Under the pieces are notes generated by a model. The model made no database searches. It was not told the origin of the DNA and saw only the letters and a list, made by a program, of their open reading frames with translations. A program made the translations under genes and the position numbers. From positions 120,471-184,470 of the forward strand of contig NIVC01002315.1 in the NCBI GenBank assembly GCA_002269645.1: 64,000 bases of DNA, written 5' to 3'. The stretch comes from Macrostomum lignano. Taxonomy: Eukaryota. Positions 28,937 through 58,629 of the stretch are shown in pieces. Each line of letters begins with the position of its first letter. Positions within the stretch are counted from its first letter, which is position 1.

Positions 28937-30210
28937 ATTGCTACTGGCAGTAGCAGACGATAGTACAGAAGAAAATGCTGCATTTTTTTGTTGGGCACTG
29001 GCAAAATTGCCGCTGCCTATTATTTTAGTTGCGGCGTTGCTGACCGGCAGAAATGCGAATTGTGAATCTATAGAACTAGTACCCTATATGCTACAGCATT
29101 TAAGCAAACCCCCTTATGAATTTCACTTTTACTTTCAACAAACAATTTTAAGATGCTGTAAAGGGGAAAGTTTAAAACATCTAAATAAGAAATGCATATG
29201 CCAGTCTCTACAACAATTCTATGAAGCTCTATAAAGACTTATAGGCTTATATTAAGTATAATTTACTATCAAGCCTATGATACTGAATACAGAAAAATAC
29301 TGATTCACTGGGCAGTATGAAACTACAATATAACAAATTTTGCAATAGTGCAGTGTAGCATAAAAAGTGGCGACCACATATTGAATCTTTTGTGATGGCG
29401 ACTTTTCAGTGTTGCTGAGTATAAATAGAAGGTTCACAATTGACAAAATAGCCAAGATAAAGCTAGCTATTTCATCAACTTCAAATCTAGCTCCCCATAT
29501 TTACAAAATGTTTGTCATATTACAGAGTTGATAAAATGGCTAGCAGCTAACTTTTCCTATTGTATATAGGTGCAGGTCATTTTTTACTATTATTTTGTCT
29601 GCCAGAGGTCTAAACTAGGGCAGGTAATTTATTTGCTATTTTGTCTAATGGAAACAAGTAGCCAACAGTAAAGTAGCATTTTTACAAAATAGTTATCTTT
29701 ATTTTTTTTTCTTATTATATTTCTTATTGCTACTTGTATTAAGATGAATAAACATGCCTGATACCTAGCCAACCTGGCTGATTTGGCTAGGTGGCAGGAG
29801 GTCTAGCCAAGTAAGTTGCAAAAATACAAACCTAAAAAGTTGGACAAAATAAAGAGGGAAAGAAAGAAAAAAGGCAAGAGATAGAAAAGGAAAGGCAAAG
29901 AACAAAAAAACAAAGGGAAAGATGCATAAACAGACTATGCTGTAGCTAGAGGGCAAAGGCAAGTAAGTGACAACCAGAAGCAACTAAGTTGCATTTCTTG
30001 GGAAAACTAAGTTACATTAGCTAGGTAAAATTTTGAAGTTGGATATATTTAAACATGAATATAGATTGTTGGCAATTTAGAATATGTTTTATTAATAAAA
30101 TAGAAACTTTTTATAGAGTTCATGATAAACAAATGCAAAAGAGAAGAAAGAATCAGAATTTGACAATGAAAATACAAAGAAAAGACATAAAAAACCTTAG
30201 ATTAAAATAA

Positions 30211-30814
30211 GGCAGTGCTTATCCCCATGGTACTGTAGCAATAATTTCTATCTTATTCCAATGGTACTGTGGGAATAATTCTCTACTTATCTGCACGGCA
30301 CACTGATGAGATAGCTGCCCTATCTTCTACATAAGCCATGGGAATAATTTAGTTTAGTACTGACAGTTTGAGTGCAGTATAACAACATAACTTTGCTTGA
30401 CCATTTGTTTTATAGAAGTAAAGATTTAATAGTTTTTTATGCAAAAAACACTTTTTGTATTTATAATGTATGATTTAAGGTAAATTGCTCTAGTAATTGT
30501 TTATAATTTGAATTTTTAGCAAAGTCTAATCCCGATGCTGATTAAAGTCCATTACCACTTCTATAGAATTCTACTAGTCATATAAATTTGCAATTTGTTT
30601 GTATAGATTATTGCATTGCTTCAACAATGTTGTGGGAAAAAATTATTCCCATGGCATATATAAAAGATAGAGCAGCTATCTGATCAGTTTGCCATGTGGA
30701 TAAGCAGAAAATTATTCCCACGGCATATGTAGAAGATAGGATAGCTATCTCATCAGTATGCCATGCGGATAAGCAGAAAATCATTCTCATGGAACCATGG
30801 GGATAAGCACTACC
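30211..30814. mobile_element. old MULE/foldback-like MITE
   Basis: Termini GGCAGTGCTTATCCCCATGG / CCATGGGGATAAGCACTACC; long internally repetitive inverted arms; perfect 9-bp TSD TTAAAATAA (30202-30210, 30815-30823). Confidence 0.85.
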
Positions 30815-32571
30815 TTAAAATAAAAGGATATTATAATATTTTTAAATTATACAATATATTACACTATGTATAAACCAACTAGAAGTATTTATTTTTCCTT
30901 TTACTTTTTTAAAATGAGCAACTCAATTAGGCTCATTGTAATGAATACTAAATAACAAAGCCAGGTAAAGGTACAAATGGGTTAATGAGTTAATATTATT
31001 AGCTTAATGTGCCTGCTAAAACTTTTAGCAATACGCTTGTAATGTGGTGAAAGCAATTGAATCTTAGGCAAACCCAGATAAATGTGAATGGAGTTTGAAT
31101 CTAAATTCTAATGAGCTAATCAATGTATATATAGTTGTAATGACCTATATAGATATTTGAAATTTTTGGCAATCTATTAAGTCTAATATATAGAGAGCAA
31201 TAGACAATCTCACTCTGAGCTCCACACAATGCATGCTTAGAAAGAAATCCAATTCAAATTATACATTATATAAAATATAAAATATAAAGGCTAAATACCT
31301 TATCAGCTAATTAGTACTACTTTTAAAATGTTTTGAATATGCATTTTTACAGTTTACCTAGGTTAGATCCTTGCCAACTAGCTAGATTGGCTTGGTGTTA
31401 AATCTAGATGATCTATGACTATATAAGGACAAGTGGCTTAATTATGGTTTAAGTATTAAAATTCCATATATGGCATATTACTATTTTGAGAAGAAAAGAA
31501 AAACTATAAATTATATTTTGCAAAACAAAATAATGCAAAATAATCTATAAGAAAAATGCTAAAAAATAATATATAAGGAATGGAAATCCATTGAATTTGA
31601 ATAGTTCAAAAGTTATGTCATCTATAACTTGGAAAATCAGACCTTTTGAGCAAAAATGATCACAGTGCCTTAGCTTATAGGAAAAATGCATTACAGGAAT
31701 ATCAAAAAATGATACTAAAAGTATTATAACTTTTTTACTACTTGACTAAATTTCAAAAGTTAGGTTTCATTTTGTTCATACAACAAATGTAATGTCTATC
31801 ATATGGTATCAAAAAGTAAATCAAACTCAAAAAATTTTAAATCTAGAAAGCCACCCTATTGTGCTTTACTTTAAATCCTTTAGCCAGGCTTAGTATACCA
31901 AGGTTGGCATACTAAGTACAACAAGTATATTCTAAGCGTATTAATTTAAACATCACAAAATATATATTAGCCTATGTAGGCCTAAAACAAAATCTAAAAT
32001 AAATTTGTTATGTCATTATGAGCATATTTTAAATCTATTTGATAGTTCATAGTTGCAAGTTATGAAATAAATAGTTGCAATTTATTTTGCTGCTACCAAA
32101 GCTGTCGAACTAGGCTTAAAATTTGGTCCTGGACATTTGCACAATTTGCCATCAGGTGTTTTTAAAGAAAGAACTTGGCAGGTCCTTCAGCTAAAGTTTT
32201 TTGCATACTTACGCAAGTAGGCCCTTTACTTTAGATATAGTTATGCGTCTTGCCTTTACTTCCGCATTTGTTACTTTTAAATATATGCTTCAGTTTAGCT
32301 TTGGCCATGCAATGCTGGTCATAAGGCCTTAGAAGCTTAAGGCATTGGAACCTGTAGGGCCTAGTGACAACAACAAATGGCGTTAAAAAAGTGTACTCTG
32401 TGTACGTGCAAAGACGGTCCGACGAAAATAAATAAAAACCATTTAAAAATACTGACATTTACAACAAATCAAACAGTAAAAAGTAAAAAAGTAATATTTT
32501 ATTCTAAAGTAAACACTTTTTTGTATTTTGAGTATTTACGTAAAAATCTTTGCGTTGAATAATGTTGATAT

Positions 32572-33263
32572 CAAGGACGACTTAAGTAGAAGGACGGGAA
32601 ACCTCGTTTCTTAGAAAAGTTTTGAAGGCACTTTTTCCCGAAAAAATACACTACGGAGATAGGAAGTTTTCATTTTTTCAGCACAAAAATTGTTATTGCG
32701 TTTGATAGGAGGCAGATCCAGTGTTCATCTCTTGATATGTTGTGCCTTTTTTATTGCTCTATCGATATTTATAAAGCTTTTCGTTCAGAAAACTAGGATT
32801 CTATGTTAATTTTTGATTCTACGTATGTTTCCTGTATCTAAAAATCACAAAAATGCATGACACAGCTCCAATATTTGGTTTTATGAACCTATTTTATCAT
32901 TCTTACCCGACTGTAGCAAATATTTGTAACAGAGATGATAAAATAGGTTCATAAAACCAAATATTGGAGCTGTGTCATGCATTTTTGTGATTTTTAGATA
33001 CAGGAAACATACGTAGAATCAAAAATTAACATAGAATCCTAGTTTTCTGAACGAAAAGCTTTATAAATATCGATAGAGCAATAAAAAAGGCACAACATAT
33101 CAAGAGATGAACACTGGATCTGCCTCCTATCAAACGCAATAACAATTTTTGTGCTGAAAAAATGAAAACTTCCTATCTCCGTAGTGTATTTTTTCGGGAA
33201 AAAGTGCCTTCAAAACTTTTCTAAGAAACGAGGTTTCCCGTCCTTCTACTTAAGTCGTCCTTG
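32572..33263. mobile_element. palindromic MITE (329-bp arms, 34-bp spacer), P-element-like termini
   Basis: Arms 32572-32900 and 32935-33263 are reverse complements with no mismatch found by eye; termini CAAGG...CCTTG; perfect 8-bp TSD GTTGATAT (32564-32571, 33264-33271). Confidence 0.92.
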
Positions 33264-33512
33264 GTTGATATTTTAAACTTTTAGTTTCAAATTTATGTTT
33301 TTCAAGGAAGTGAAATAAATCAAGTGAGAAACGTTATGGATCTCTTAGACACGCGGCGGCCATGTCTGTAATATAGAATGCGTCTCACTGGAGAGAGTCA
33401 GAGTCAAAGATACAGACAGCAGCTGTGTCAGTATCAGTAAGCCTGCATAGCGCCAGCGGCCGTGTCGTTATCATTAAAATATTTCACACTTAGACTTCAC
33501 ACTAGACTAGAG

Positions 33513-33624
33513 GGCAATCTTCTCGAATTATTCGTTTAATTATTTCCGGAATTATTTCGCCCTCTATTCAAGGGTGGTGGGGGGGTGGGGGTTGGAATTA
33601 AACGAACGATTCGAGAAGATAGCC
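33513..33624. mobile_element. 112-bp MITE, Merlin-like (GG termini, 8-bp TSD)
   Basis: ~29-bp TIRs GGC(A/T)ATCTTCTCGAAT..TTCGTTTAATT; TSD GACTAGAG (33505-33512, 33625-33632); interior shared with 62410-62524. Confidence 0.8.
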
Positions 33625-33689
33625 GACTAGAGACTGAGACAGAGGGTGGCCGTGTCCCTAATAATATAGACTCCTGGTAGCGATGCTCG

Positions 33690-34200
33690 TTTTATAAATA
33701 GTAGAAAAATGAAGGCCAACACCAACATATAAGTAAATTATTATATCCAACGCGTTTCGACACAAGCGGTCATCTTCAGGGCTTGCACTCATGGTTCACA
33801 ATTCCGTATATTTAAATAAATAAAGAAAATCAAAAACTGTACAGGGCAATAGACGAATGGGTTCAGTCCGGTCGATAATTGTACATTAAGAGACGAAAAT
33901 AAATTAAATTATTAGGCCATCACACAGAACAAACAAACACAGCGCAAACAATATTGGCAGGGAGAGAGCCGCAAACCCACACCAAGCCTAGAAAACTTTG
34001 AGCTGTAAATTGGCTCCTCCACCAGCAAGCTAAGTATTGAGACTAGGTTTATGATGCTTAATGTGCCAGGCTTCTAGCACTCTGAGTTTGCCATCAAATC
34101 TACATCTATTCAGAAGATGACTGCTTGTGTCAGAATGCATTGGCTATAATAATTTACTAACTATAATTTTTCTAATATACAATTCATTCAACACAGGCTA
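33690..34200 (-). mobile_element. Penelope-like retroelement remnant with inverted pseudo-LTR piece
   Basis: Minus strand ~34103-33988 reads LNRCRFDGKLRVLEAWHIKHHKPSLNT*LAGGGANLQLKVF* (same family as 10205-10307), followed by a 3' UTR and hammerhead at 33781-33747; an inverted decayed copy of the hammerhead/tail lies at ~34100-34165. Confidence 0.8.
33747..33781 (-). ncRNA. hammerhead ribozyme motif (weakened stem I)
   Basis: CC-CTGAAGA-T-GAC-CGCTTGT-GTC-GAAA-C-GC-G-TT-GG; palindromic stem III AACGCGTT; stem I has only 2 bp in this copy. Confidence 0.55.
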
Positions 34201-36701
34201 GAAGCCGGCCTTAACCTTAAATTTTCTTGCTATATTAAATTAAGTCTTAAATTTTCTTAACTAAAACTAGGTCTAGCTTAGTCTATTTTGGTCTAGACAT
34301 TTATAATTATAGGCCAGGGCCAAGCAATTATAAATTTATGATTTTTTCAAAATTTCCAATTGATGGTTTATATAGCCTATAGGTCCATAAAAATTGCTTT
34401 TAGACAAATTGCCTATTGAAATTTGCCTACCAAGCTTTTCTTGCCAAGACTTGCCTATAGTGCATTTTTCCTCTAAATAAATTTTTTACCAAGATTTAAT
34501 TTTAAATTGGATAAAAAGTATAAATGATCCGCAGATTAGCCCAGGGAAAGGCTCTGCTGCTAGATATATTAGGGACCATATTGCCAAGGATATAAAGCCC
34601 AAAAGGCCCAGATTAGGACTAGGACTCAAGGCCTAATGAAATAGCCTTATTGGATATTACTAGCAGCCTAAGCCTATAAGGATACTAGGGCCTACCAACC
34701 TAACAATAGAGTTAGGAGGATGAGTACAATGACTGTACAAAGACTAATCTACCTAAGCTAGCCCCAATGACAAGTCCAAAATATGCACAAAAAGATTAAA
34801 ATTGGAAATTTTTAGAAAATTAATAGAAACCCAGTCTACAGAAATGGCTTTAAGATTGGAGCAAGTCTAGGTAGGGGCCACTTATTTACTAAGGGCAAGT
34901 CTTTTATCAGATAGGTTGAAATTAGTAAAGTCAAAGATGTTCAAATTGATTCTCCTATAGGGCTGCAAGCCTTAAGGCTTTTTTACTATCTAGCTTTTTA
35001 ATAAGCCTAAGCTAAGGGGTTAGAGAGGTTTTCCTTATTTGGGACAAACTTTTCCCTAGGACATCAATCCACTATCAATGATAAGAGCCAAGAGACAATC
35101 AAAGGAGCCAACAAATGGACTAGAAAAGGCAGAGCTTATAACATTGGACAGCTACATAGCCAAAAAGGTAAAATGCAAAGCTAAAACAAAGGGATAAAAA
35201 CAATAAGAAGGAACACTTAAACCTTTATTATGGGGCTTAGCCTCAAGGCTAGTATCAATTGGGCTCTACTATACACTTTTGTAAATGGTCATCTTTCTTG
35301 CAAGGCAAGTACAACTAAGGGGCTCAAGTCCCATTCTACTAGTCATACTGCAATCCAAAGTCACAATTACTCAATGTTTTATATATCCCTTTCCTTGTAA
35401 ATAAAAGGAGGGCCAAAAAATAGAAAAATAAAGGGTCTATTTTTATATGTGCATATCACCTCAAATAAGGGTATTTAAATATTGAGCTTCTTGAAGGGTA
35501 GGTCAATTGAATAGCCCACTGAGATTTTCCTACAATGCAATTTGCTTGAGTAAGTTTTTTTCTACTGAGGTTTGCCCACAAAGCTTTTTCTTATATAAAA
35601 TTTAGTATATTTAGATAGAAGTAGCAACTAACTTGCTTTGTTAGCCAACATTTTTTAACCAAGTGCTTTCCATTATGAGCCCATTGATTTTTATTTCTTT
35701 TTAGTAGTGCAATAATTTTTGTTAACTCTTAGCCTCACCTTAAAGTGCTATTCACTCCAACCATCAAGGGGACCATTGTGTGCTTTTATTTGTGATTTGA
35801 ATGACAATGTTTAAAAAATTGGGGGAAGTGAAATAAATTTATAGATTTGTGTGAAGTACTACCATCTCACTTTTTACTTGTACTAATAGTGCCTAATAAT
35901 GTTCTTGATTTGACTTTCAAGATTTGATTAAATTATATTTTGTATACCAGTGCTAACCCAAAATCTATAACTTAGCATTGATTTTTCTAGTTATATTTTT
36001 TATTATTGTAAAAGTTTTAAACCATGTTGAATACATTTTTAAAAATATATTTTCCATTGTGGTTGTAAAAATATAAATCTGCCTTCTTACTAAAAGTACC
36101 AGGTCATCTGGACAATTATTGCATTTTCTCCAAATTATAATTAGTCAGACCAAAAACAGTTGCAAGCTGCTCCAAGCCAAATCTGTGGAATAGCCCATCT
36201 TTGGGCACAAAATCCCTATGATCCCCCATTTTTATCTCAAAAAATAAAAGATAAGTGCTAGGGGAAATGTCTTGGCTGTAAGCTGGATGCTTAGGTAGTA
36301 TGCTTATTTAGTACACTGGGCATACATGTGCAACCCCCCCCCCCTGATTTACACTGGCCATGCAACTTACAACCCTAGAGCAAAATTGATGCAATGTTGG
36401 GTAAACGGCAGGAGTAACTATTACTGTATTATTGAGGCTAAGTTACTCGTCATCTAATTAGTACTACGTCTGTATTCTTTGGGATCCTTGGGATATTCTT
36501 TGGGCATTTTTGTAACTTACCCCTGTACAATTTACTGTGGCCGGATCGGCCAGGTCGGCCAGCAGTTGCGCATGTATGACACTGAGAAAGTACAGTAACC
36601 GGGTAGTCTATTTAATCGGCCTGCATATTTGTACTTAGTCTTGCACTATGCCGCGTATATTCTTCAGCTTTTGGAATTCTATTCGGCTGCAACTCAAACA
36701 G

Positions 36702-39700
36702 ATGGCGGACCAGCTGCCTATAGACAATGAGGCCGAGCCTCGCTACGAAGATGCCATCGATGTCGAAGATGCTGGGGAAGCTGAAGCAATGATGGCGGAA
36801 GAAGTAGAAGCAGAAGAAGAGCAATTAGAAATGGAAGAAGGTGAGGAAGAGTTTCACCTGGCGGAAGAAGATTTGCAGCTAGATGATGAAGACGGAGATG
36901 AGGAGGCTGATGAGCAGCCTGGCGATCAGATTGGTGCAGCGGCCGGATTTCCCGCTCTGCTGCGTCTGTTTCCGCGCCGACTGGCCTGGCCACAGCAGCC
37001 GGAGCCCGATGATGCTTCATCAGCAATGGAAGCGGCCAACGCGCCTCACCTCATCACTTTCAATCGCCAGCTGCCCAGAGAGCACGCTTACCTTGGCGGG
37101 GATCTTGAAGCGCCGTCCAATGTCTCCACTTCAACAGTTAATTCGCTGGCCGATTCAGGCGTGATAGAGCTGCCATGTCTCACCTGCTCCCTGGGCATCC
37201 TGCTGCCCGGCCAGCTGTTGCCGGTGGCGCTGTTCCGCCCGTCTGACGTGGCCCTGGTGTCCGGGATGCACTCTGGCCAGGTAGGCCCAGTGGCCGTGCT
37301 GCACCGCTACCGGTACAGCAGCACGGCCGAGCTGCTGTCCTGCAGAGAGGAAGTTGACGACAACGTCGGCTTGACGATGATCCGAGCTAAGCTGATTGGC
37401 CGTCGACGATTCGAAGCGTTGAGTGTCCGGCGAGACATTGCCGGCCGATTGTTGGCCAAAATTCGACTGCTGCCGGAGCCAAAGTGAGTGCCGCTGTGCT
37501 GCCGTGTCCTTCATCCTTGCTTCCTTAGATAGCTTTCATCTTAGTGATCTATTCCAGCTTTGAATGTATCACCATCAATCAATTAAAATGCTGCAACAAG
37601 CAAAAAAGCGAGGATTCGTTTCGAGTCTCGGCCAATGGGAAGGCAATGCGAAAGACTAGTAAAAATGATTTATAAAAACCATTGTTAAACCAGTCATAGA
37701 GTCACATTAGTGAGAGTCTTAAACGTAAGTTATTAAGTTATTTCACAGGGGCAAGCGGTCAAGCCACGGATGATGCTGACCTCTGAGCATGCTCACACAG
37801 GGTGTAAACTACAGCGGCCCTGGCTTGCATCGTCATGGACTGCCTGCCATATGCCTTAAACACATTAAGTAAATTGCTAGTTTACCTATTACCGCAGGCA
37901 AATGAGTCCGTGTTCGTTCAGGCGGCCCAGTCCCCGTCGATCGCTCGCACTGTCAACTTGTCCGTTCCCGTCCTGGGTGGCCGATGCCTACGATGCCAGA
38001 CAGCTGGTCAGCGCGGTGCGGACTGAGCTGGCCTCGTGCAATCGTTCCTGGTCGGAGGTGCAGGTGTGACTGCTGGTTGCATTGAGAATTTAAGCGACTA
38101 CCTTTCTTTGTATTTAAGACTTGGGTAGGCTACTGCAGTGCCTCCCTGAGTAGGCTATTGGAGGTCAGTGACCCCCTGAGCATTAACAGGTTCCTGAATA
38201 GGCTATTGGAGGTCAGTGACCCCCTGAGCATTAACAGGTTCCTGAATAGGCTATTGGAGGTCAGTGACCCCCTGAGCATTAACAGGTTCCTGAATAGGCT
38301 ATTGGAGGTTAGTGACCCCCTGAGCATTAACAGATCCCTGAATAGGCTATTGGAGGTTAGTGACCCCCTGAGCATTAACAGATCCCTGAATAGGCTATTG
38401 GAGGTTAGTGACCCCCTGAGCATTAACAGATTCCTTAATAGTCTATTGGGGAGGGTCAGTGCCCCCACCAACAGTTCCTTAGTCTTACACGTGTTTAGAG
38501 TGCTAGGAAGGTGCCCCACCAAGCACAGATCCTCTTATTGGTTTCTACGGTAACTAAACAGATTTCACATGTCTGAAACCGCCTGTTAAATGTTGAACTC
38601 ACAGGCCGGCCCAGACGAGCCCACCGCCTTTGCCAACTGGCTGCTGGAGCAGCTGCCCCTGCCAGATTGGCTCCGCGCTGACCTGCTCGGCTGCCCTCAT
38701 CCGTCCGGCTGCCTTCGCCGCTGCCTCCGTCTGCTCCGTCGCTGCACCACCCTGCGCTGTGTCCGCTGTTTGAACCGAGTCGCCGACAAATCCGCCATCT
38801 TCTGCTTGGCCGCCGGCGGCTCCACAGGCGCCTACGTTAATCCTGGCGGCCACGTCCACGAGATGATGACTGTGGCGGCGGCCACCGGGGTGCGGCCGGT
38901 TGGCCGGCCCTGCACCGAGCACAGCTGGTTCCCCGGATACGCTTGGCAGGTGAGTCTCTTGGCCGGAGCATTGCTCAATTAGCTTCTGAAGAATATTAGA
39001 AGCTATTTGATATTTGCACCTGTCCTGAAATTGTTATTAGCGCGCGCTTACGATAGTGAACATTAATGATAGTGAGCATTTATCATAGTGAGCATTTATG
39101 ATAGTGAGCATTTATGATATTGAGCATTTATAATAGTGAGCATTTATCATAGTGAGCATTTATAATAGTGAGCATTTATGATAGTGAGAATTTATGACAG
39201 TGAGCATTTATGATAGTGAGCATTTATGATATTGAGCATTTATAATAGTGAGCATTTATCATAGTGAGCATTTATAATAGTGAGCATTTATGATAGTGAG
39301 AATTTATGACAGTGAGCATTTATGATAGTGAGCATTTATGATAGTGAGCATTTATGTTAGTGAGCATTGATGTTAGTGAGCATTTGACGGTGAGCACTTA
39401 TGATAGTGAGAATTTATATAGCGTGGCATTATCAGCACAGCATTAACTATACTCATCTACAATAGTAAATCTCATCTGTCTTCTACGCAGATCCTGGAAT
39501 GCGCCCAGTGCTCCCGTCACATGGGCTGGCGTTTCTCCGCACAGAGCTCGGACACCCGGCCGGCCGCTTTCTACGGCCTGTGCCGGTCCTCCGTACAGCC
39601 GGATCTGACGGCCAGCCTAGAGGAGGAGCGGGACAACCCGGATGAGGCGCAACTAGCCGAGCTGGAGGCTGGAGCGCGAGTCCAGCTTCGCAGTGCCGGC

Positions 39701-39748
39701 CTGGGTGCGGCCGGACCCAGTTTTGCAGATGGCGATGACGCGGACTGA
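36702..39748 (+). CDS. CRBN: cereblon (acidic N-terminus, Lon-like domain, CULT domain)
   Basis: Exons 36702-37483, 37898-38063, 38605-38949 and 39491-39748 join in frame. Motifs REHAYLG, YVNPGGHVHE, TEHSWFPGYAW, HMGWRF; Zn-binding CVRC and CAQC pairs. Confidence 0.95.
38140..38460. repeat. intronic tandem repeat, 51-bp unit
   Basis: (AGGCTATTGGAGGTCAGTGACCCCCTGAGCATTAACAGGTTCCTGAAT...)n, about 6 copies in CRBN intron 2. Confidence 0.95.
39050..39420. repeat. intronic minisatellite, 16-bp unit
   Basis: (GATAGTGAGCATTTAT)n in CRBN intron 3. Confidence 0.95.
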
Positions 39749-40920
39749 GTTTCACAATAAGCGCAGTTTAATGTAGTTGTTCTTGGCAAAGTTGTCTAGT
39801 AGCCATGGTCTGATCAATATTGTTATCGATATCGTTCTGTATCTCTGAGTTGGTATTTCCTTCTCTGACAGTTGCGAGGCTTATTAATCCGGTTTTGTTC
39901 CATCAATCTTTCATCAAATTATCGACTTTTGTACTTTAGATGCTCCTCTGTCATTCAAGTCGTCTCCTTAGCTGTGTGGACAAAACTATTTATTGATGTA
40001 AATAAATATCATAATTCAACTGCATTCTGTTTTGAGTGATTGCGTGTGAAAATGTATTAGAGCAATGGAAATAATCTAAGATTAGGAAGACCATAGTGGG
40101 TTGTTAACTAAGTTATTATTATAAAATTCAGTAACTAGGAAAAGGGATCGCTAGCCCTGTGGATTAGTGCATATTTGGGGTTGCCCGTTGAAAACGTCAT
40201 TGCAAACAATTCACAGATGACTCTAGCGACTCAAATGACTTTAATGCGACTGTTGAGTCACGAGCGCATCACTTGGGTTGCAGAATCGTAAGAGTCGCAA
40301 AAGATTCGTCCCAAGAGTCTCTGTGTTGGCGCTTGGTACAGTAGAAGCGCAATGCGATTCAAATTGATTAAGTGACGCAGGTGCGCTTTAGACGCAACTC
40401 TGATTCTTTAGCGACTCTGGCACGCCTCAGATGCCACTCTACTGCCCCAGAGTTGCAGATAATAAAACGCCTCAAATTGGCTCATGCGACTCCTATGACG
40501 ACTTCGAAGACTAGTGGCATTGTCGTTTAAAGAGTCGTCTAGAGCCACTTCTTTCCTATTTTACCTGTGTTACCTGCAACGACTCTGGGGCGAAGCAAGT
40601 GACTCTGAGACGCTTCTTGACTTAGGTACCGTTTTCATCGGGTTAGCATTGCAAGTTAAGCAGAGTTGACCGCGGTTAGTATGCAGCTAGCTATCTGATA
40701 AATCGAGCTTGCGTCATCCACAAAGCAGCCATAGCTACCTCCGATCAGCTTTCGGCAATGGCTTGACCCCTTTGTGGCCTGGCCGCCGACCGGGACTCCA
40801 TGGAGGATGACACCTATGCCAAGCGCTGGAGTAGCTCTCGGGATGATGCTTGGACAGTTGGACTGGTTTCCTCCTCAGTCAGACGTAATTCTGAGTCTCC
40901 TCTTATCCATTTACTCTCTG

Positions 40921-41140
40921 GGCATAGCAGCTCAGCGGTAAACGCGTCTGAAGCTCACATTACCGCCCCGGGTTCGAATCCGTACGCGGGCACATTTATG
41001 TGGAGCTTGTGCATCGGTGAGGGCCAACTCCTAAGGCACATAGAGTGTACATTCTTGACAATTAGAAATTCAACAAGGGCTGCTTTACACCCCCTGTGTG
41101 AGCCGTGTGTGAGTGCTCAGGAGTCTGCGAAATAAATAGA
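40921..41140 (+). mobile_element. tRNA-derived SINE (family A)
   Basis: GCAGCTCAGCGGTAAACGCGTCTGA...GGTTCGAATCC head; tail AGAGTGTACA...CTGTGTGAGC is shared with the copy at 14690-14840 and a fragment near 37785-37830. Confidence 0.7.
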
Positions 41141-41226
41141 ATCGCCCCATAGCCTTGGGCCAGGTTGTCCACAACGCTCCCGTGTATAGAATGGCCTAAT
41201 CAAAACCAAACTGAAACTCTCCTCAG

Positions 41227-42785
41227 CGACCTGTTAGTATTCGAGTTCTGCAGTTCAGCTCTCAGGCGGCGTCTGCGGCGGCTGCTGCCTCGGCGGCGCC
41301 GGGCTCGCATTCGCCCGTGCTGGCGGACGCTGTCACCGAGCTGCTGGTTGGCGCCTGCCAAGGAACTCGCCGCCCCGGCAGCCGGATTCTGCTGCTCGAC
41401 GCCACATTTGGCGCCGGCGGTCACACCCGACGACTGTTAAGAGGGGCGTCCGAAGCGTCGACGCCGATCACAGTGTACGCCAACGATCGCGATCCTGCCG
41501 CCTACCGGCTTGCCGGACAGCTGTCCGAGTCTTTGCCGCCCGGCTCCGACTCCGCCTCGGTGGTGCCGCTGTTGGGGAAATTCTCCCAGCTGGCCGAGCA
41601 CGCTGAGCTGACGGGCGTTGAGGGCATCGATGGCGCCCTGTTTGACCTGGGCCTGTGCTCAGCACAGCTGGATGAGGCAAGGCGCGGCTTCGCCCTGTCA
41701 GCTGACGGGCCGCTCGACATGCGCATGGGCGGCCCGGCCGAGGCCGACTCGCCAACCGCCGCCGATCTCGTCAACGGGCTGGAGACCGGCGACCTCGCCG
41801 CTCTGTTTCGCGCCTACGGCGAAGAGCCAATGGCGCGCCGGCTGGCCCGGGCCGTGGTTGAGCGGCGCAGCGGGCCGCGCGGACCTCTGCGCACGACGAA
41901 ACAGCTGGCCGATTGCCTGGCGGACGCTGTGGGCAGCGCGCGTCGGAAAGACAGCTTGGGCCGCAGTGCGCACCCGGCGACGCGAGTGTTTCAGGTGAGA
42001 GGAAACAGATAGTCAAGCCTGATGTTTTGTACCTTTGCTAAGCGTTGTTCTGATACATATCGGCTATTAGTTGATCCGTTTAAAAATGATTAGTATGGTG
42101 AACATGTTTTTTGTTATCATGTCGGTCTGAAAGGACGGTCTAAATAATTAGACAGAGTTTTCTGTACTTCGATACATATCGGCAAGCAAAGAATTTGTTT
42201 TAAAAATATTCTTAAGTAGTATAAATATATTTTTTGTAAAATTTTGTTCAAGTATATATATTCGTCTAAATTACTATTCTAGGTGCCTTCAATAGTTTCA
42301 ATACGCATCGGACATAAATCATTTAAATAGTGTCAGTAGTATAAATGGAGTTTATTGTCATAATATATAAATATGAAAAATAAAAACCCCAATCGCAGGC
42401 GCTACGGATCGCGGTGAACAACGAATTTATTGAGCTTCTCAGCGGGCTCCAGCTGGCCAGACAGCTGCTCAAGCCCGGCGCGCCTTGCCTGGTGCTGTCC
42501 TTCCACTCGCTTGAGGATCGCCTGGTCAAGCGCGTCTTCGCCAACCGGTCGCTGGACGACCTCTGCTGTCCGGCCGCCTGGGCCGACGCTTTCAAGCGGC
42601 AACGATCGCCGCAGTCGCTGCACGCCGAGCCGCCGCCGCCGCCGCCGCCGCCGCAGCCGCAGCTCTGGCAGCTGATGCGGTTCGATTCGAATCGGGGCGA
42701 AGATTACCTGATGGCCGGGCCGGCCGAGGTGGCCGAGAATCCTCGGGCCCGTTCGGCTCGGCTGCGAGTCGGACTGAAACTGTGA
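41227..42785 (+). CDS. METTL15: mitochondrial 12S rRNA m4C methyltransferase (RsmH/MraW family)
   Basis: Exons 41227-41994 and 42399-42785. Motifs HSPVL, LDATFGAGGHT, DRDP, DLGLCSAQLD..RGF...DGPLDMRM, HPATRVFQ|ALRIAVNNE, SFHSLEDRLVK, NPRARSARLR. The start codon is unresolved (see findings). Confidence 0.93.
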
Positions 42786-43292: not shown

Positions 43293-43620
43293 CCTGTCAA
43301 ATAACTTGCAACAAGTTGACTAACTTGTAGCCTAGTGGCTAGAGCGTTAGACTTACGACTTGAAGGTCGGGGGTTCGATTCCCTATCCCACTGGGAACAA
43401 TTTGTGTCCTTGAGCCTGTCAAATAACTTGCAACAAGTTAACTAACTTGTAGCCTAGTGGCTAGAGCGTTCGACTCACGACTTGAAGGTCGGGGGTTCGA
43501 TTCCCCATCCCACTGGGAACAGTTTGTGTCCTTGAGCAAGACACTTAACTCTGCATTGCTTCAGTTCACCCAGCTGTAAAGTTAGGGTGTGTGTGTGTGG
43601 CGACCCCCCAGTCCTTGGAC
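43293..43620 (+). mobile_element. tRNA-derived SINE (family B) with tandemly duplicated 5' part and a CORE-like central domain
   Basis: A box TAGCCTAGTGG and B box GGTTCGATTCC, present twice (43293-43414 and 43415 onward); then GTGTCCTTGAGCAAGACACTTAACTC...CAGCTGTAAA, resembling the conserved central domain of CORE-type SINEs. Confidence 0.75.
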
Positions 43621-44419
43621 TGAACAGCCGTACGCAGCCTTCAGATGCGCCGCGCAATAGCTGCGGCTGAGCTGTCGGTTGCACACCTGGCCATTAGGGC
43701 AGGTGTCATCAATTAATTAAGCAATAAACTCACACAATCTCGAATGCATTTCCAATTCAATTCAATTATTATTAATGTTGCTAATTAGCCTTTCTGTGCC
43801 TACAACTTTGTTTGTTATTCTATTGTAACAGATAAAGTTCAGAAAAAAACAGCATTTGAAGTGTTTGATAGCTAATGTAAATAATGAAGCCAACCCCTCT
43901 AAGAGGAGCCTGCACCGGCTACATGTGCAATCATTTACCAGTTCACACACTACGCAGCACCAGCTTCACTGCAAGGCTGACTGGGTAATTTACAGAAGTT
44001 ATATATTATTTCATCATCTTGCTGTTGTGTGTGTGTGCCCAATATCCGTACATGTATTAGCTAAATGTACATGCGGTGCGTGTGTCTGTCTATAGCTGCC
44101 TGTCTATATAAACTGTGTCAAATTAGAACTGTACTGTGCTGACTTCTCTGTCAGTCTCTCAGGCTGGTGAATTCTGTTCCTCACTGCGCGGATTGCATAT
44201 ACCGAGGTAGCTGGCTGCAGAACTGCCGAAGGAATTCAGTGCACAATACTGCAACTGTGTCACTTACTGTCTTGGACTCAAGGTTGAAATCGATTGAATG
44301 CATTGTGCTAGTGCTCACGTGTTTATGTGCTAGCTTACTGGATTTGGAGTTTTAGACATGTACATGCTCTCGTGTACATGTGCATGCCAATGCGTTTCAA
44401 AATGTACAGCTTGATAGAT

Positions 44420-46340
44420 TGAGAGCTACATTACAGTGCAAAACATGGTAGATTGAGAGCTAAATTACAGTGTACAACATGGTAGATTCGGAGCTACATT
44501 ACAGTGTACAACATGGTAGATTGAGAGCTACATTACAGTGTACAACTTTGTAGATTCAGAGCTACATTACAGTGTACAACTTTGTAGATTCAGAGCTACA
44601 TTACAGTGTACAACTTTGTAAATTTAGGGCTACATTAGTGTACAACTTGGTAGATTCAGAGCTACATTACAGTGCACAACATGGTAGATTGAGAGCTAAA
44701 TTACAGTGTACAACATGGTAGATTCGGAGCTACATTACAGTGTACAACATGGTAGATTGAGAGCTACATTACAGTGTACAACTTTGTAGATTCAGAGCTA
44801 CATTACAGTGTACAACTTGGTAGATTCAGAGCTACATTACAGTGTTCAACTTGGTATATTCAGAGCTACATTACAGTGTACAACATGGTAGATTGAGAGC
44901 TACATTACAGTGCACAACATGGTAGATTGAGAGCTAAATTACAGTGTACAACATGGTAGATTCGGAGCTACATTAGTGTACAACATGGTAGATTGAGAGC
45001 TACATTACAGTGTACAACTTTGTAGATTCAGAGCTACATTACAGTGTACAACTTTGTAGATTCAGAGCTACATTACAGTGTACAACTTTGTAAATTTAGG
45101 GCTACATTAGTGTACAACTTGGTAGATTCAGAGCTACATTACAGTGTACAACTTGGTAGATTCAGAGCTACATTACAGTGTTCAACTTGGTATATTCAGA
45201 GCTACATTAGTGTACAACATGGTAGATTCAGAGCTACATTACAGTGTTCAACTTGGTATATTCAGAGCTACATTACAGTGTACAACATGGTAGATAGAGA
45301 GCTACATTACAGTGCACAACATGGTAGATTGAGAGCTACATTACAGTGTACAACATTGTAGATTCGGAGCTACATTACAGTGTACAACTTGGTAGATTGA
45401 GAGCTACATTAGTGCACAACTTGGTAGATTGAGAGCTAAATTACAGTGTACAACATGGTAGATTGAGAGCTACATTACAGTGTACAACATGGTAGATTGA
45501 GAGCTACATGTACATTACAGTGTACAACTTGGTAGATTGAGAGCTACATTACAGTGTACAACATGGTAGATTGAGAGCTAAATTACAGTGTACAACATGG
45601 TAGATTGAGAGCTACATTACAGTGCACAACTTGGTAGATTCAGAGCTACATTACAGTGCACAACTTGGTAGATTCAGAGCTACATTACAGTGTACAACTT
45701 GGTAGATTGAGAGCTACATTACAGTGTACAACTTGGTAGATTGAGAGCTACATTACAGTGTACAACATGGTAGATTGAGAGCTACATTAGTGCACAACTT
45801 GGTAGATTCAGAGCTACATTACAGTGTACAACATGGTAGATTGAGAGCTACATTACAGTGTACAACTTGGTAGATTGAGAGCTACATTACAGTGTACAAC
45901 ATGGTAGATTGAGAGCTACATTAGTGCACAACTTGGTAGATTGAGAGCTACATTACAGTGCACAACATGGTAGATTGAGAGCTACATTACAGTGTACAAC
46001 ATGGTAGATTCGGAGCTACATTACAGTGTACAACATGGTAGATTGAGAGCTACATTACAGTGTACAACTTTGTAGATTCAGAGCTACATTACAGTGTACA
46101 ACTTGGTAGATTCAGAGCTACATTACAGTGTTCAACTTGGTATATTCAGAGCTACATTACAGTGTACACATTGGTAGATTGAGAGCTAAATTACAGTGTA
46201 CAACATGGTAAATTCAGAGCTACATTACAGTGTACAACATGGTAAATTCAGAGCTACATTACAGTGTACACATTGGTAGATTGAAAGCTACATTACAGTG
46301 CACACCTTGGTAGATTGAGAGCTAACATTACAGTGTTTAT
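44420..46340. repeat. minisatellite, 34-bp unit (31-bp deletion variants)
   Basis: (ACATTACAGTGTACAACATGGTAGATTGAGAGCT)n over ~1.9 kb, ending just before the TRIM first coding exon. Confidence 0.97.
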
Positions 46341-46378: not shown

Positions 46379-49300
46379 ATGTCCAAGGCTCGTCAGGACC
46401 TGGAAGACCGGGTTACCTGCCCTGTATGCCTGGAGCACTTTGTCGATCCGCGCCACCTGAGCCAGTGCAATCACACGGTGTGTCTGCGCTGCTACGCCCG
46501 AATGCTGGCCGGCGTACCGGAGGGTGTCCGGTGTCCGCTGGGCTGTCCGGGTGTCTGCGACAAGCGGCCAGAAGATTTGGCACCGAATCGTACCATGTTG
46601 GATCTGCTGGAGCAGGTGACATGCGCGGTTTCTCAATCGAGTCAAAGTGTTGTTACAGGCGCTCAAATTCCACACAACTGACTTGACATTTATCAACAGG
46701 GACTGGCCCCCAACAACAGGGACTGGATATTCAACAACAGGGACTGGACATTCGACAACAGGGACTGTTAATTCAACAACAGGGACTGGACATTCAGCAA
46801 CAGGGACTGGACATTCAGCAACAGGGACTGGACATTCAGCAACAGGGACTGTTGATTTAACAACAGGGACTGGACACTAAACAACAGGGACTGGACACCA
46901 AACAACAGGGACTGGACACCAAACAACAGGGACTGGACACCAAACAACAGGGACACCAAACAACAGGGACTGGACACCAAACAACAGGGACACCAAACAA
47001 CAGGGACTGGACACCAAACAACAGGGACTGGACACCAAACAACAGGGACTGGACAGCAAACAACAGGGATTGGACACCAAACAACAGGGACTGGACATTC
47101 AGCAACAGGGACTGTTGATTTAACAACAGGGACTGGACACCAAACAGCAGGGATTGGACACCAAACAACAGGGACTGGACATTCAGCAACAGGGACTGGA
47201 CAATCAACAACAGGGACTGGACAGTCAACAACAGGGACTGGACAGTCAACAACAGGGACTGGACAGTCAACAACAGGGACTGGACAGTCAACAACAGGCA
47301 CTGTTGATTTAACAACAATTTTCACACACCTGAAATCCTCAGGCGAACCGCGCCCACTTGCTTGCCGTGGCGCGCCCGAACGGCGCCGCCTGCCAGCGCA
47401 GCGGCTGCTCCCGCGCCAGCCACGGTCGTTGCGAGCACTGCGACGCCGATTTGTGCAGTCGGCACCTGCTTGAGGACGCCTATCTCTATGGCAACGCTTG
47501 CGAGTCACTCTGCCAGACGACGCGCCGCCTCGCTGACGAGGCCGAAGCCGCCTGGCGTCGAATGCTGGCCGGACAGGAGGCTCGGCGCGGCCGTCTATCC
47601 GAGCTGCAGGTCAGTTCATCAGTGCGCGTGCACTTATGGTCTGTGCCAAAGGTGTTGACAAGCCCCGAATATGCTCGTACTCTTGTTGCGTCTTGGCGCA
47701 TCCATTGCGTCTTGACGTGCTCTAGTATCCAAGTGTACTAGTGTGCCTCTGTGTCTCAAATGGGCTTTGAGTGCGTCTTATCGCGTCCTAGTATCTGCTT
47801 CTGTGCCAAGAATCAATGCAAACCTCACTTTTGCTGAGTGAATCTCTTAACTGCATCGATATTCTCTGTCTCCTTAAAATCTTGTGGATATTTTGCCCGC
47901 CGAATGTTTTGGCCCCCGGATGTTTTTTCCCGGATGTTTTCCCCCCGATGTTTTGCACCCTCCCGTATGTTTTGCCCCCCCCCCGGATGTTTTGCCCCCC
48001 CGGATGTTTTGCCCCCCCCGGATGATTTGCCCGTTGGACGTTTGCCCTGTCTGATTTTTTCCCATTAGCCTACCCTTCACTTCTCTTCTTTAATACGCGA
48101 GAAGAGCTGTTATTATTAAATAATCTGATATTCCGCGGACCGCCAGACCGCCTGTCGCGAGCTGCTCACTCTTGCACGGGACGCCGACGCCGCGGCGGAA
48201 GGGCGCGCCAAATCTGCGCTCTCAGCGGCGCAATCCGAGGCCGACCGGCGCCGCGAGGCCCGCAGCCTGGCCGACCAGCTGGAGCGGGAGACGGCCGAGG
48301 GCAACACGGCCGAGATGCGCCGGCTGGCCGAGCGGCTCCAGCCGCTGCTCGACCGCCTGCGGACACGTCGACTGGCCGGCGAAGCCGACGCTCGCGCCGA
48401 GGCGGCCACGTCGGAAGCGCTTGAGCGTCTTGGTGAGGCCTGCGCAGAGCTTCGACGCTTAGCAGCTCCGCTGGCGCGTCGGCTGAGCAGTTGCGATGCT
48501 GCCGGAGGCGCCTGCGGCGGCGGCGGAGGCGGCGGAGCAGCCGGCGGCGATGCCGGAGTTCGCTGGCCCCCTAAGAAGATTTTTCACTACCGCTGCACTG
48601 ACGCTGCGGTTGTGGTGCACTCGGGCCGCGGCCTGGTGTGCCGCCCCGGCCTAGCCGGCATTCGAATAGCGACAGAGACGGAGCTGACGGACGGCCAGGG
48701 CGGCGACTCTGGATGGGAGCCGCTTCCGTCGCCTGTTGTCTACCTGCTGGCCCAGGGTGGCTCAGTCATCAAGGTGGCTATGGGGATCGATGGGGATGTA
48801 GAGATGAAGGCGGCTTTCGGGATCGATGGGGATGTTGGGATCACGGCCGGCTGTGGGGATCGATAGGGATGTTGGGATCAAGGTGGCTGTTAGGATCGAT
48901 GGGGATGTTGGGATCAAGGCGAATGCGGGGATCGATAGGGATGTTGGGATCAAGGTGGCTGTTAGGATCGATGGGGATGTAGGGATCAAGGCGAATGCGG
49001 GGATCGATATGGATGTTGGGATCAAGGCGGCTGTTAGGATCGATGGGGATGTAGGGATCAAGGCGGATTCGGAGATCGATTGGGGATGTTGGGATCAAGG
49101 TGGCTGGAGGATGTGCACGGGGCTTCGAATGGCTCTCAGCTTTTTACATGTGCTTATTCCACTTACCAGGTCCTCAGCTGCTCGGGCCGAAGCCTGACTT
49201 CACTGCAGTTGGACTCTTCTTCATCGGCGGTAGCTGACGCTGCGATCGCTTCAACCACTGTGGGCAGCCTGACCTGCCTGCTGTACATCGGCGGTCCCGA

Positions 49301-50060
49301 CCAGCTGCTGGCCGCGGCCGATGGAGGTCGAGTTTACCTGGCCGACTTGGCCGGCCGCCTGCGGCACGCCATCGCCGATGTCGGGAGGCCGTCTGGACTC
49401 TGCGCCGATGCCAGTCGGCGCCGGCTGTTCGTTGCCGACTCCGATCGGCGTAGCATCGCCGTGCTGTCGCTGGAGACTCGCGTCCACCAGATCGTCATTG
49501 ATGTTGTGCCCTTCGCGCAGTCGCTTGGGGGCATCGGCATTCTTGATGGTCGACTGTTTCTAGCTGACACAGTTGGCGGACAGGTGCTGACTGACTGACT
49601 GACTGACTGACTGACTGACTGACTGACTGACTGACTGACTGACTGACTGACTGACTGACTGACTGACTGACTGACTGACTGACTGACTGACTGACTGACT
49701 GACTGACTGACTGACTGACTAACTAACTAACTAACCGCTGTACACCCTCAGGTGGTGGTCCTGGACGCGGACACGGGGCTGCGTCAGCTGGAATTCCGAG
49801 TGGACTCGCCCAGCTGGCTGACGGCGGACGCAGCCGCAGGCGTGCTCTACGCGGTGACCAGCGGAGGCCAGCGCATCCAGGCGCACTGCTCAGACGACGG
49901 TCGTCTAATTGCCAGCGTTGGCGTCGCCGGGAGCAACGGCCGGCGCCCTGGCGAGTTTCGCGACCTCGGCGGCCTGGCCGTGTGCGCGGGCTGTGGCGAG
50001 TTGCTGGCCTGCGATCGGGGCAACGGCCGAGTGCAGGTGTTCTCGCTGCTGCCCACTTGA
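46379..50060 (+). CDS. TRIM-NHL-like protein (RING, B-box, coiled coil, NHL/beta-propeller)
   Basis: Phase-0 exons 46379-46615, 47343-47609, 48147-48773, 49170-49583 and 49752-50060. RING CPVC..CNHTVCLRC..CPLGC; B-box-like CQRSGC..CEHC....CSRH; Ala/Arg/Glu helical region; NHL repeat GSNGRRPGEFRDLGGLAV...CDRGNGRVQVF. Confidence 0.88.
46690..47315. repeat. intronic minisatellite, 21-bp unit
   Basis: (CAACAGGGACTGGACACCAAA)n with 15-bp deletion variants. Confidence 0.95.
47890..48060. repeat. irregular short tandem repeat (GGATGTTTTGCCCCCC-like)
   Basis: About 9 variable units in TRIM intron 2. Confidence 0.8.
48774..49105. repeat. intronic minisatellite, 36-bp unit (72-bp dimer), beginning at the splice donor
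   Basis: GGGATCAAGGTGGCTGTTAGGATCGATGGGGATGTT alternating with GGGATCAAGGCGAATGCGGGGATCGATAGGGATGTT. Confidence 0.93.
49587..49734. repeat. (CTGA)33(CTAA)4 microsatellite filling TRIM intron 4
   Basis: The intron spans 49584-49751; the array covers 148 of its 168 bp. Confidence 0.97.
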
Positions 50061-50345: not shown

Positions 50346-50427
50346 GTCGCGATGGCCGAGTGGTTAAGGCGTTGGACTAGAAATCCAATGGGGTTTCCCC
50401 GCGCAGGTTCGAATCCTGCTTGCGACG
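50346..50427 (+). tRNA. tRNA-Ser-AGA: tRNA-Ser (anticodon AGA)
   Basis: 82 nt; acceptor stem GTCGCGA/TTGCGAC, anticodon arm TTGGA-CTAGAAA-TCCAA, long variable arm, GGTTCGAATCC, discriminator G, downstream T-run Pol III terminator. Confidence 0.96.
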
Positions 50428-58200: not shown

Positions 58201-58629
58201 AATTTGTACACCAGTCTTTTATGCCACACTGTATACAGCTAAGAAATGTATGCCGGTATATGCCACAGAACTCAAGTATATGCCGGAAAATTCTAGTGTA
58301 TATCTCTCCTTCTGCAATATAGCCTGAATATTCTATATACCAAGTGTATGCCAAGATTGTTAGCAAAAGCAAAAATATGCTAGAATTTTTTGTCATAAAG
58401 GCCACTTTCCAGACTATGGCTGCTTAGTAGTACTTAAGTAACCTTTTATTAAACTTAAACTATACCAACTTTCAAATTACTTTATTCCTAACTAAAGCTT
58501 TGCTAGGAGTCTTGTACATGGCCACTTGACTGAATTTAATATAAGACTCTTATTAGGAGTCTTAAGCTAATAATATTTAAACATGTTTATTATTGGATCA
58601 ATAATAAATCTAGCTACTCAATCTTAAGT

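What the first reader, a model, noticed from the sequence alone, without database searches (positions are those of the whole stretch)
41200..41330. METTL15 first exon has no ATG: a spliced leader may donate the start codon
Seen: the METTL15 frame is open from an in-frame TGA at 41212 to the conserved HSPVL motif with no ATG. A 3' splice site (ctgaaactctcctcAG, 41225-41226) lies exactly in phase 0 before CGA CCT GTT AGT ATT CGA GTT CTG CAG TTC AGC TCT. Established: flatworm spliced leaders end in AUG, and that AUG can initiate translation; METTL15 is mitochondrial. Inference: leader plus acceptor gives MRPVSIRVLQFSSQAASAAAAAS..., an Arg/Ser/Ala-rich, acid-free presequence-like N-terminus. Translation and import of this protein would then depend on trans-splicing.
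Basis: partly seen in the sequence, partly recalled or inferred. Interest (0 to 1): 0.72.

Follow-up and report, generated by a model that had tools for sequence, protein, structure and literature searches.

The report
Spliced leader supplies METTL15 start codon
In the flatworm Macrostomum lignano, the gene for the mitochondrial rRNA methyltransferase METTL15 has no start codon of its own and almost certainly borrows the AUG at the end of the trans-spliced leader, a mechanism already known in flatworms, so this is a correct but ordinary finding.

Summary
The window is Macrostomum lignano assembly Mlig_3_7, contig NIVC01002315.1. A two-exon METTL15/RsmH gene (41227-41994 and 42399-42785) is open from an in-frame TGA at 41212. 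It has no in-frame ATG until codon 165, which lies past the SAM-binding motif. A pyrimidine-rich CAG acceptor ends at 41226, in phase 0.

The M. lignano spliced leader is 35 nt and ends in ATG. Joining it at 41227 gives a 385-aa ORF starting MRPVSIRVLQF.

I could not inspect RNA reads. However, the deposited GenBank proteins for two of the three gene copies start exactly at 41227 as 5'-partial CDSs. They come from a pipeline that cuts transcripts at peaks of leader-containing reads.

The three copies also support the model. Upstream of the acceptor, divergence is neutral and the indels break the frame (2 and 37 bp). Downstream, all indels are multiples of 3 and dN/dS is about 0.3. Both upstream ATG-exon rivals are broken in one copy.

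The N-terminal extension is as long as in other flatworm orthologues. It has no acidic residues but only two basic ones, so it is only weakly presequence-like.

Initiation at a leader AUG has been established in flatworms since 2006. This is a new example of a known mechanism.

The parts
41212..41214 (+). In-frame TGA that closes the METTL15 reading frame upstream
   Evidence: In copy L003 a 2-bp insertion moves this TGA out of frame, and the in-frame stop there is a TAG 42 nt upstream of the acceptor.
41216..41226 (+). Pyrimidine-rich tract plus CAG: the 3' (trans-)splice acceptor (actctcctCAG)
   Evidence: It matches the published M. lignano trans-splice acceptor motif [T/C]TNCAG at 5 of 6 positions. 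The last 10 nt before the junction are identical in all three gene copies.
41227..41994 (+). METTL15 exon 1 (256 codons, phase 0 at both ends). It is the first genomic exon and has no ATG before codon 165
   Evidence: GenBank PAA58944.1 (P0122, 'partial') starts at exactly this base.
41227..41307 (+). 27 genomic codons (RPVSIRVLQFSSQAASAAAAASAAPGS). Together with the leader-encoded Met they form the 28-aa N-terminal extension, a putative mitochondrial presequence
   Evidence: 0 acidic and 2 basic residues, 54% Ser/Thr/Ala. The length equals that in Opisthorchis (28) and Spirometra (29) orthologues. A 9-bp in-frame deletion and a synonymous change in L003 fit a coding region.
41308..41319 (+). 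Conserved H-x-P-V motif at the start of the RsmH/METTL15 fold
   Evidence: Invariant H, P and V in alignment A2. The PDB alignment to mouse METTL15 starts at this residue.
41398..41424 (+). SAM-binding motif DATFGAGGH. It lies upstream of the first in-frame genomic ATG, so it must be translated from an earlier start
41719..41721 (+). First in-frame genomic ATG (codon 165). Starting here would give a 220-aa fragment without the SAM-binding motif
41995..42398 (+). Single cis-intron, 404 nt, GTGAGA...CAG, AT-rich
42399..42785 (+). METTL15 exon 2 (ALRIAVNNE... to the TGA at 42783-42785)
   Evidence: The end of the gene call matches L001 11559.
40807..40884 (+).
   Evidence: The donor is poor against the GT[G/A]AG consensus. 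In copy L002 a C-to-T change at the position equivalent to 40855 turns CAG into TAG in this frame.
40800..41108 (+). Second rival: an ATG-started ORF ending at a consensus donor TGT|GTGAGT, rejected
   Evidence: In copy L003 a 37-bp insertion sits just before the donor, and the donor itself is changed from GTGAGT to GTGTGT.

Best explanation
The pre-mRNA of this M. lignano METTL15 copy is trans-spliced. The 35-nt spliced leader (CGGTCTCTTACTGCGAAGACTCAATTTATTGCATG) is joined to the acceptor at 41226|41227. The leader's terminal AUG is the only AUG in the leader and the first in the mature mRNA, 32 nt from the cap. It then lies in frame with CGA CCT GTT... and serves as the initiator codon. The product is a 385-aa protein, MRPVSIRVLQFSS..., with a 28-residue acid-free extension in front of the conserved RsmH/METTL15 fold. 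That extension is probably the mitochondrial presequence. The genome encodes no usable start codon, so full-length METTL15 can only be made from the trans-spliced mRNA. Shown here: the gene structure, the phase, the absence of any alternative ATG, conservation of this arrangement in all three gene copies, and the fact that the public transcript-based model starts at this base. Inferred: that the leader is physically joined here, that ribosomes start at its AUG, and that the extension directs import.
For: (1) Organism and leader: the window is identical to M. lignano NIVC01002315.1. The leader ends in ATG and is found on about 30-39% of genes.
(2) Leader plus exons gives one uninterrupted 385-codon ORF from the leader ATG.
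(3) There is no in-frame genomic ATG before codon 165. The intervening ATGs are out of frame, and the SAM-binding motif lies upstream of codon 165.
(4) GenBank PAA58944.1 and PAA59314.1 are 5'-partial and start exactly at the acceptor, as do three UniRef entries. The annotation pipeline (TBONE) sets mRNA 5' ends at peaks of leader-containing reads. A 5'-partial ORF that stops 12 nt short of the in-frame stop at 41212 requires a transcript beginning at 41227.
(5) Comparison of the three copies: the 450 nt upstream diverge at 3.4%, close to pS of 2.9%, and carry indels of 2 and 37 bp. The CDS has only 9-, 9- and 3-bp indels and dN/dS of 0.26-0.34.
(6) The predicted 28-aa extension matches the orthologues' 28-39 aa and shares a weak RP(V/A)S...FSS resemblance with Spirometra.
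(7) The neighbouring gene's model also starts 1 nt after a YTNCAG acceptor. This shows that such 5' ends in this annotation are trans-splice sites.
(8) Precedent: the leader AUG is in frame in 28% of S. mansoni trans-spliced transcripts, and more than 40 cDNAs need it (Cheng et al. 2006, as summarised in PMC9851317).
Against: No leader-joined read or cDNA was seen. The searches that could have found one returned nothing, and they were insensitive. The gene is not listed in the supplements that are held. The third copy's deposited CDS starts 3 nt later, at PVSIR, which is unexplained. Two further in-phase CAG acceptors (41254, 41266) could be used instead of or alongside 41227. The acceptor matches the published motif at only 5 of 6 positions. 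The leader AUG has a weak context (T at -3, C at +4). The extension has only 2 basic residues against 4-6 in orthologues, so mitochondrial targeting is not established.
Confidence: 0.78

Rival explanations
1. A cis-spliced upstream exon supplies the ATG. The candidates are 40807-40884 (donor GAC|GTAATT) or 40800-41108 (donor TGT|GTGAGT), each spliced to the acceptor at 41227.
For: Both candidates are open, start with ATG and are in phase with 41227. The second has a consensus donor.
Against: In copy L002 the first candidate carries an in-frame TAG. In copy L003 the second candidate has a 37-bp frame-breaking insertion and a mutated donor, while the downstream CDS is intact in all copies. Upstream divergence equals the synonymous rate. 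The first donor is poor. The extension would contain acidic residues. Public models start at 41227 and include no upstream exon.
Confidence: 0.06
2. Translation starts at a near-cognate codon inside exon 1 (AUU 41239 or CUG 41248), whether or not the mRNA is trans-spliced.
For: In-frame ATT and CTG codons lie upstream of the HSPV motif. Non-AUG initiation is known for some organellar isoforms in other eukaryotes (general knowledge).
Against: On the trans-spliced mRNA an in-frame AUG lies upstream and would be met first. Flatworm leader AUGs have been shown to initiate. A non-trans-spliced transcript would carry the upstream ATG at 41191 followed by a stop.
Confidence: 0.06
3. The leader is joined at a different in-phase acceptor (41254 or 41266). 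This would give a shorter N-terminus, MFSSQAAS... or MAASAAAA...
For: CTGCAG|41254 matches the YTNCAG motif perfectly, and both sites are in phase 0.
Against: Public models for two copies start at 41227. The residues RPVSIRVLQ resemble orthologue N-termini. Removing them would take away both basic residues.
Confidence: 0.07
4. The gene is a decaying pseudogene that has lost its start codon.
For: There is no genomic ATG, and M. lignano carries many duplicated genes.
Against: All three copies keep an intact 377-384-codon frame. They have only in-frame indels, dN/dS of 0.26-0.34 and conserved splice sites. All catalytic motifs are retained. No other METTL15 gene from this species appeared in the homologue search.
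Confidence: 0.03

Closest known systems
[quoted passage not shown]
   Same: The leader ends in AUG, the acceptor is in phase with the ORF, and the recipient gene has no usable AUG of its own. More than 40 S. mansoni cDNAs are of this type.
   Different: The species is different: a free-living macrostomorph rather than a parasite. In Macrostomum the use of the leader ATG as a start codon is only mentioned in passing (PMC10468722), and it has not been demonstrated for this gene.
Echinococcus granulosus thioredoxin glutathione reductase: alternative trans-spliced mRNAs encode mitochondrial and cytosolic variants (Agorio et al. 2003, cited in PMC2873472)
   Same: It is a flatworm gene in which trans-splicing determines which N-terminus, and hence whether a mitochondrial leader peptide, is made.
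   Different: There, two alternative transcripts give two localisations. Here a single obligatory N-terminus is expected and no cytosolic isoform is evident.
Trypanosoma brucei isoleucyl-tRNA synthetase dual targeting by alternative trans-splicing (PMC3273800)
   Same: The choice of trans-splice site controls whether a mitochondrial presequence is encoded (title and abstract only).
   Different: The AUGs are genomic and the kinetoplastid leader does not donate the start codon.
Human and mouse METTL15, bacterial RsmH (PF01795; PDB 7pnx, 8ipi, 3tka)
   Same: Same fold and motifs (E = 2e-64 to human METTL15), with a mitochondrial N-terminal extension in front of the HxPV motif.
   Different: The mammalian extension is about 70 aa and is fully encoded in the genome with its own ATG.

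Membership tests
mRNA whose initiator AUG is donated by the spliced leader (flatworm slORF) | The organism has an SL RNA whose leader exon ends in AUG | tested here: met
   The organism was identified as M. lignano. Its 35-nt leader ends ...TTGCATG (PMC8629364). No SL RNA gene lies in the window itself.
mRNA whose initiator AUG is donated by the spliced leader (flatworm slORF) | The leader is physically joined to this acceptor (leader-containing reads or cDNA) | not testable with these tools
   The support is indirect only. The public 5'-partial CDS starts exactly at 41227, and the pipeline sets 5' ends from leader-read peaks. Searches for a junction sequence or an M-initiated protein found nothing.
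mRNA whose initiator AUG is donated by the spliced leader (flatworm slORF) | The acceptor is in phase, so that the leader AUG reads into the conserved ORF | tested here: met
   Leader plus exons gives a 385-aa ORF from the leader ATG. The phase is conserved in all 3 copies.
mRNA whose initiator AUG is donated by the spliced leader (flatworm slORF) | No genomic in-frame AUG can give the functional protein | tested here: met
   The frame is closed by TGA at 41212. The first in-frame ATG is at codon 165, after the SAM motif. Upstream ATG exons are disabled in other copies of the gene.
mRNA whose initiator AUG is donated by the spliced leader (flatworm slORF) | Ribosomes initiate at the leader AUG | not testable with these tools
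   This needs ribosome profiling, N-terminal proteomics or a reporter. It is inferred from S. mansoni.
METTL15 / RsmH N4-cytidine rRNA methyltransferase (PF01795) | Significant match over the full-length domain, with the conserved HxPV, GAGGH, DRD and QALRI-VN-E motifs | tested here: met
   PF01795 is precomputed for the cluster. PDB METTL15 matches at E = 2.4e-64 and RsmH at 2e-47. The motifs are visible in A2 and in the translation.
Mitochondrial matrix-targeting presequence | N-terminal, free of acidic residues, net positive, able to form an amphipathic helix, and predicted by TargetP or MitoFates | tested here: inconclusive
   The extension has 0 acidic residues and a length like the orthologues, but only 2 basic residues and a middling hydrophobic moment. 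No targeting predictor was available.
Downstream gene of an SL-resolved operon | An upstream trans-spliced gene on the same strand, within 1 kb after subtracting repeats, and a polycistronic precursor | tested here: inconclusive
   An upstream cereblon-like gene lies on the same strand, with its stop at 39748 and an AATAAA near 40012. The gap to 41227 is about 1.2 kb before any repeat adjustment. Synteny is kept in all copies. Precursor reads were not available.

The most novel reading that the evidence does not exclude
Loss of the genomic start codon makes METTL15 production, and through it maturation of the mitochondrial small ribosomal subunit, strictly dependent on SL trans-splicing in Macrostomum. 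This gene could be one of a larger, so far uncounted set of M. lignano genes deposited as '5'-partial' that are in fact complete once the leader Met is added, possibly enriched for organelle-targeted proteins.
Probability: 0.12. Interest if true: 0.45.

Novelty: new member of a known kind. Interest (0 to 1): 0.25.

Why it matters
The main value is for annotation. The GenBank and UniProt entries for this gene (PAA58944.1, PAA59314.1, PAA75191.1 and three UniRef entries) are labelled partial and lack their first residue. The same is likely true of other M. lignano genes whose leader AUG is in frame. It also gives a clean, testable example, in a flatworm that can be made transgenic, of a conserved housekeeping gene that cannot be expressed without trans-splicing. 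It does not reveal a new mechanism.

Tried and rejected
- A protein search with the leader-initiated N-terminus (126 aa), aimed at transcript-derived fragments starting MRPVSIR, returned one unrelated hit. It did not even return the known M. lignano protein, so the negative result is uninformative.
- An exact scan of metagenome contigs for the leader-exon junction found nothing, as expected for a laboratory flatworm.
- Searches for the gene identifiers in paper texts and in the supplements that are held found nothing.
- The Schistosoma phytochelatin synthase paper was checked as a possible precedent for a leader-donated mitochondrial start. That gene is not trans-spliced, so it is not a precedent.
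- A BLAST of the 1.2-kb upstream region against the window, to see whether it is a repeat, found only a 25-nt match. Rfam and ARAGORN did not call the tRNA-like stretch at 40915-40995.
- The bacterial promoter/terminator scan does not apply to this eukaryote and was ignored.
- The Wasik et al. 2015 genome paper is not held.
- The pseudogene, cis-exon and non-AUG readings were considered and rated low; see the rival explanations.

Full report
**What is in the sequence.** An in-frame TGA lies at 41212-41214, followed by AAC TCT CCT CAG and then CGA CCT GTT AGT ATT CGA GTT CTG CAG TTC AGC TCT from 41227. The frame stays open through HSPV (41308-41319) and the SAM-binding motif DATFGAGGH (41398-41424) to a GTGAGA donor at 41995. 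After a 404-nt AT-rich intron, a second exon (42399-42785) continues with ALRIAVNNE... and ends at a TGA. The first in-frame ATG is at 41719, codon 165. The only earlier ATGs in the exon (41630, 41672) are out of frame. Upstream, the only nearby in-frame ATG (41191) is followed at once by a stop.

**Identity of the gene and the organism.** The 384-aa translation matches human and mouse METTL15 structures at E = 2e-64 and bacterial RsmH at 2e-47. It belongs to PF01795. The best database hits are Macrostomum lignano proteins at 98-100% identity. The window is base-for-base identical to contig NIVC01002315.1 of assembly GCA_002269645.1, Mlig_3_7. M. lignano trans-splices about 30-39% of its genes to a single 35-nt leader, CGGTCTCTTACTGCGAAGACTCAATTTATTGCATG, which ends in ATG (PMC8629364; PMC5730564).

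**Evidence that the transcript begins at 41227.**
- I could not look at reads.
- The deposited protein PAA58944.1 (BOX15_Mlig020506g2, labelled 'partial') is exactly the translation from 41227. The gene call spans 41227-42785.
- The second copy (PAA59314.1) and three UniRef entries also start at RPVSIR.
- A 5'-partial ORF that begins 12 nt after an in-frame stop is only possible if the underlying transcript starts at that base.
- In this annotation, 5' ends were set by the TBONE pipeline at peaks of leader-containing reads.
- The neighbouring upstream gene shows the same signature. Its model starts one base after attcttCAG at 36667.
- I take this as strong indirect RNA evidence for trans-splicing at 41226|41227.
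- One loose end remains. The third copy's deposited CDS starts one codon later, at PVSIR, although its genomic acceptor is identical.

**The phase.** Leader plus exon 1 plus exon 2 gives one ORF of 385 codons. It starts at the leader's only ATG, 32 nt from the 5' end: MRPVSIRVLQFSSQAASAAAAASAAPGSHSPVL.... If that AUG were skipped, scanning ribosomes would next meet out-of-frame AUGs. For contrast, adding the leader to the upstream cereblon-like gene puts the leader AUG out of frame. It opens a 21-codon uORF that overlaps that gene's own ATG at 36703. In-frame use of the leader AUG is therefore a property of this gene, not of every trans-spliced gene.

**Comparison of the three gene copies.** M. 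lignano carries three copies of this locus: the window (L001), L002 and L003.
- The last 10 nt before the junction (CTCTCCTCAG) and the first codons are identical in all three.
- In the 450 nt upstream, L003 differs at 14 of 411 aligned positions (3.4%). It carries indels of 37 and 2 bp, and the 2-bp insertion lies only 8 nt before the AG.
- In the CDS, pS is 2.9% and pN is 0.7% (dN/dS 0.26-0.34). All indels there are 9, 9 and 3 bp.
- The first of these is a 9-bp deletion in the Ala/Ser tract of the N-terminal extension.
- Respect for the reading frame therefore begins between 41218 and 41266, which is where the acceptor lies. The gene is under purifying selection, so it is not a pseudogene.

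**The rival upstream exons.** I listed every ATG-started, stop-free stretch ending at a GT in phase with 41227.
In L002 it carries a C-to-T change that creates an in-frame TAG.
- The only candidate with a consensus donor is 40800-41108, part of a 111-codon ORF. In L003 it is disrupted by the 37-bp insertion just before the donor, and the donor itself is changed from GTGAGT to GTGTGT.
- Neither candidate can be a conserved coding exon.

**The N-terminus.** With the leader Met, 28 residues precede HSPV. The corresponding lengths are 28 in Opisthorchis, 29 in Spirometra, 39 in Calicophoron and 31 in Drosophila obscura. There is a weak resemblance to the Spirometra start: MSLRPASTICRIFSSA against MRPVSIRVLQFSSQA. 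The extension has no acidic residues and is 54% Ser/Thr/Ala. It has only two basic residues, against 4-6 in the orthologues, and a middling helical hydrophobic moment. 'Presequence-like' is plausible given that METTL15 acts in mitochondria, which is established knowledge. It is not demonstrated here, and 'Arg-rich' overstates the case.

**Remaining uncertainties.** Two other CAGs after the stop are also in phase: CAG|41254, which matches the YTNCAG motif perfectly, and CAG|41266. Sequence alone cannot say which acceptor is used, and the annotation points to 41227. In-frame near-cognate codons (ATT 41239, CTG 41248) exist, but they lie downstream of the leader AUG. Attempts to find a leader-joined transcript or an M-initiated protein in the available collections failed and were insensitive.

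**Comparison with what is known.**
- Cheng et al. 2006 showed that the leader AUG is in frame in 28% of S. mansoni trans-spliced transcripts and that more than 40 cDNAs need it (summarised in PMC9851317).
- For Macrostomum, the leader's final ATG is noted as a 'translation start codon' in PMC10468722.
- Trans-splicing that determines a mitochondrial N-terminus is known for Echinococcus thioredoxin glutathione reductase and for trypanosome IleRS.

**Verdict.** This case is a further member of a known class. Its practical consequence is that the database entries labelled 'partial' are probably complete apart from the leader-encoded methionine.

Noticed in passing
window 36660-36730: The upstream cereblon/CULT-like gene (model 36669-39748; weak Yippee-Mis18 Pfam hit) also begins right after a YTNCAG acceptor (cttCAG|C at 36667|36668). 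There the leader AUG would be out of frame and would open a 21-codon uORF (MLLEFYSAATQTDGGPAAYRQ) overlapping the gene's own ATG at 36703. This is a possible translational brake.
   Followed up: partly
L003 5998-6003 (equivalent to window 41227-41232): The third gene copy (PAA75191.1, Mlig033630g1) is deposited with its CDS starting one codon later (PVSIR instead of RPVSIR), although the genomic acceptor and first codons are identical. The cause is unknown and may lie in the annotation or trimming.
   Followed up: partly
window 43293-43537: Two tandem copies of a 122-bp unit each contain a tRNA-like core (sub-threshold Rfam tRNA hit, 22.9 bits at 43327-43387). This looks like a tRNA-derived SINE-type repeat just downstream of METTL15.
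   Followed up: partly
window 40915-40995: Another degenerate tRNA-like stretch (GGGCATAGCAGCTCAGCGGTAAA...GGTTCGAATCC) lies in the region upstream of METTL15. It is conserved in all three copies. ARAGORN and Rfam did not call it.
   Followed up: partly
window 44403-46336: A large 34-bp minisatellite with 57 copies and 90% matches lies between METTL15 and the next gene (a TRIM/NHL-like gene, 46379-50060).
   Followed up: no
window 38145-38466 and 39048-39421: Two intronic minisatellites lie in the cereblon-like gene: a 48-bp unit with 6.7 copies and a 16-bp unit with 23.6 copies.
   Followed up: no
window 42630-42665: The proline-rich tract near the METTL15 C-terminus (PPPPPPPPQPQ) varies in length between the three copies (PPPPLQPQ, PPPPPPQ) through in-frame indels.
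   Followed up: partly
window 50346-50427: A bona fide tRNA-Ser(AGA) gene (63 bits) lies on the + strand shortly after the end of the TRIM/NHL-like gene.
   Followed up: no
window 30001-36000 and 56001-64000: Long stretches have only 28-36% GC, against 45-63% elsewhere. Composition in this genome is strongly bimodal, with GC-rich exons and AT-rich introns and intergenic DNA.
   Followed up: no
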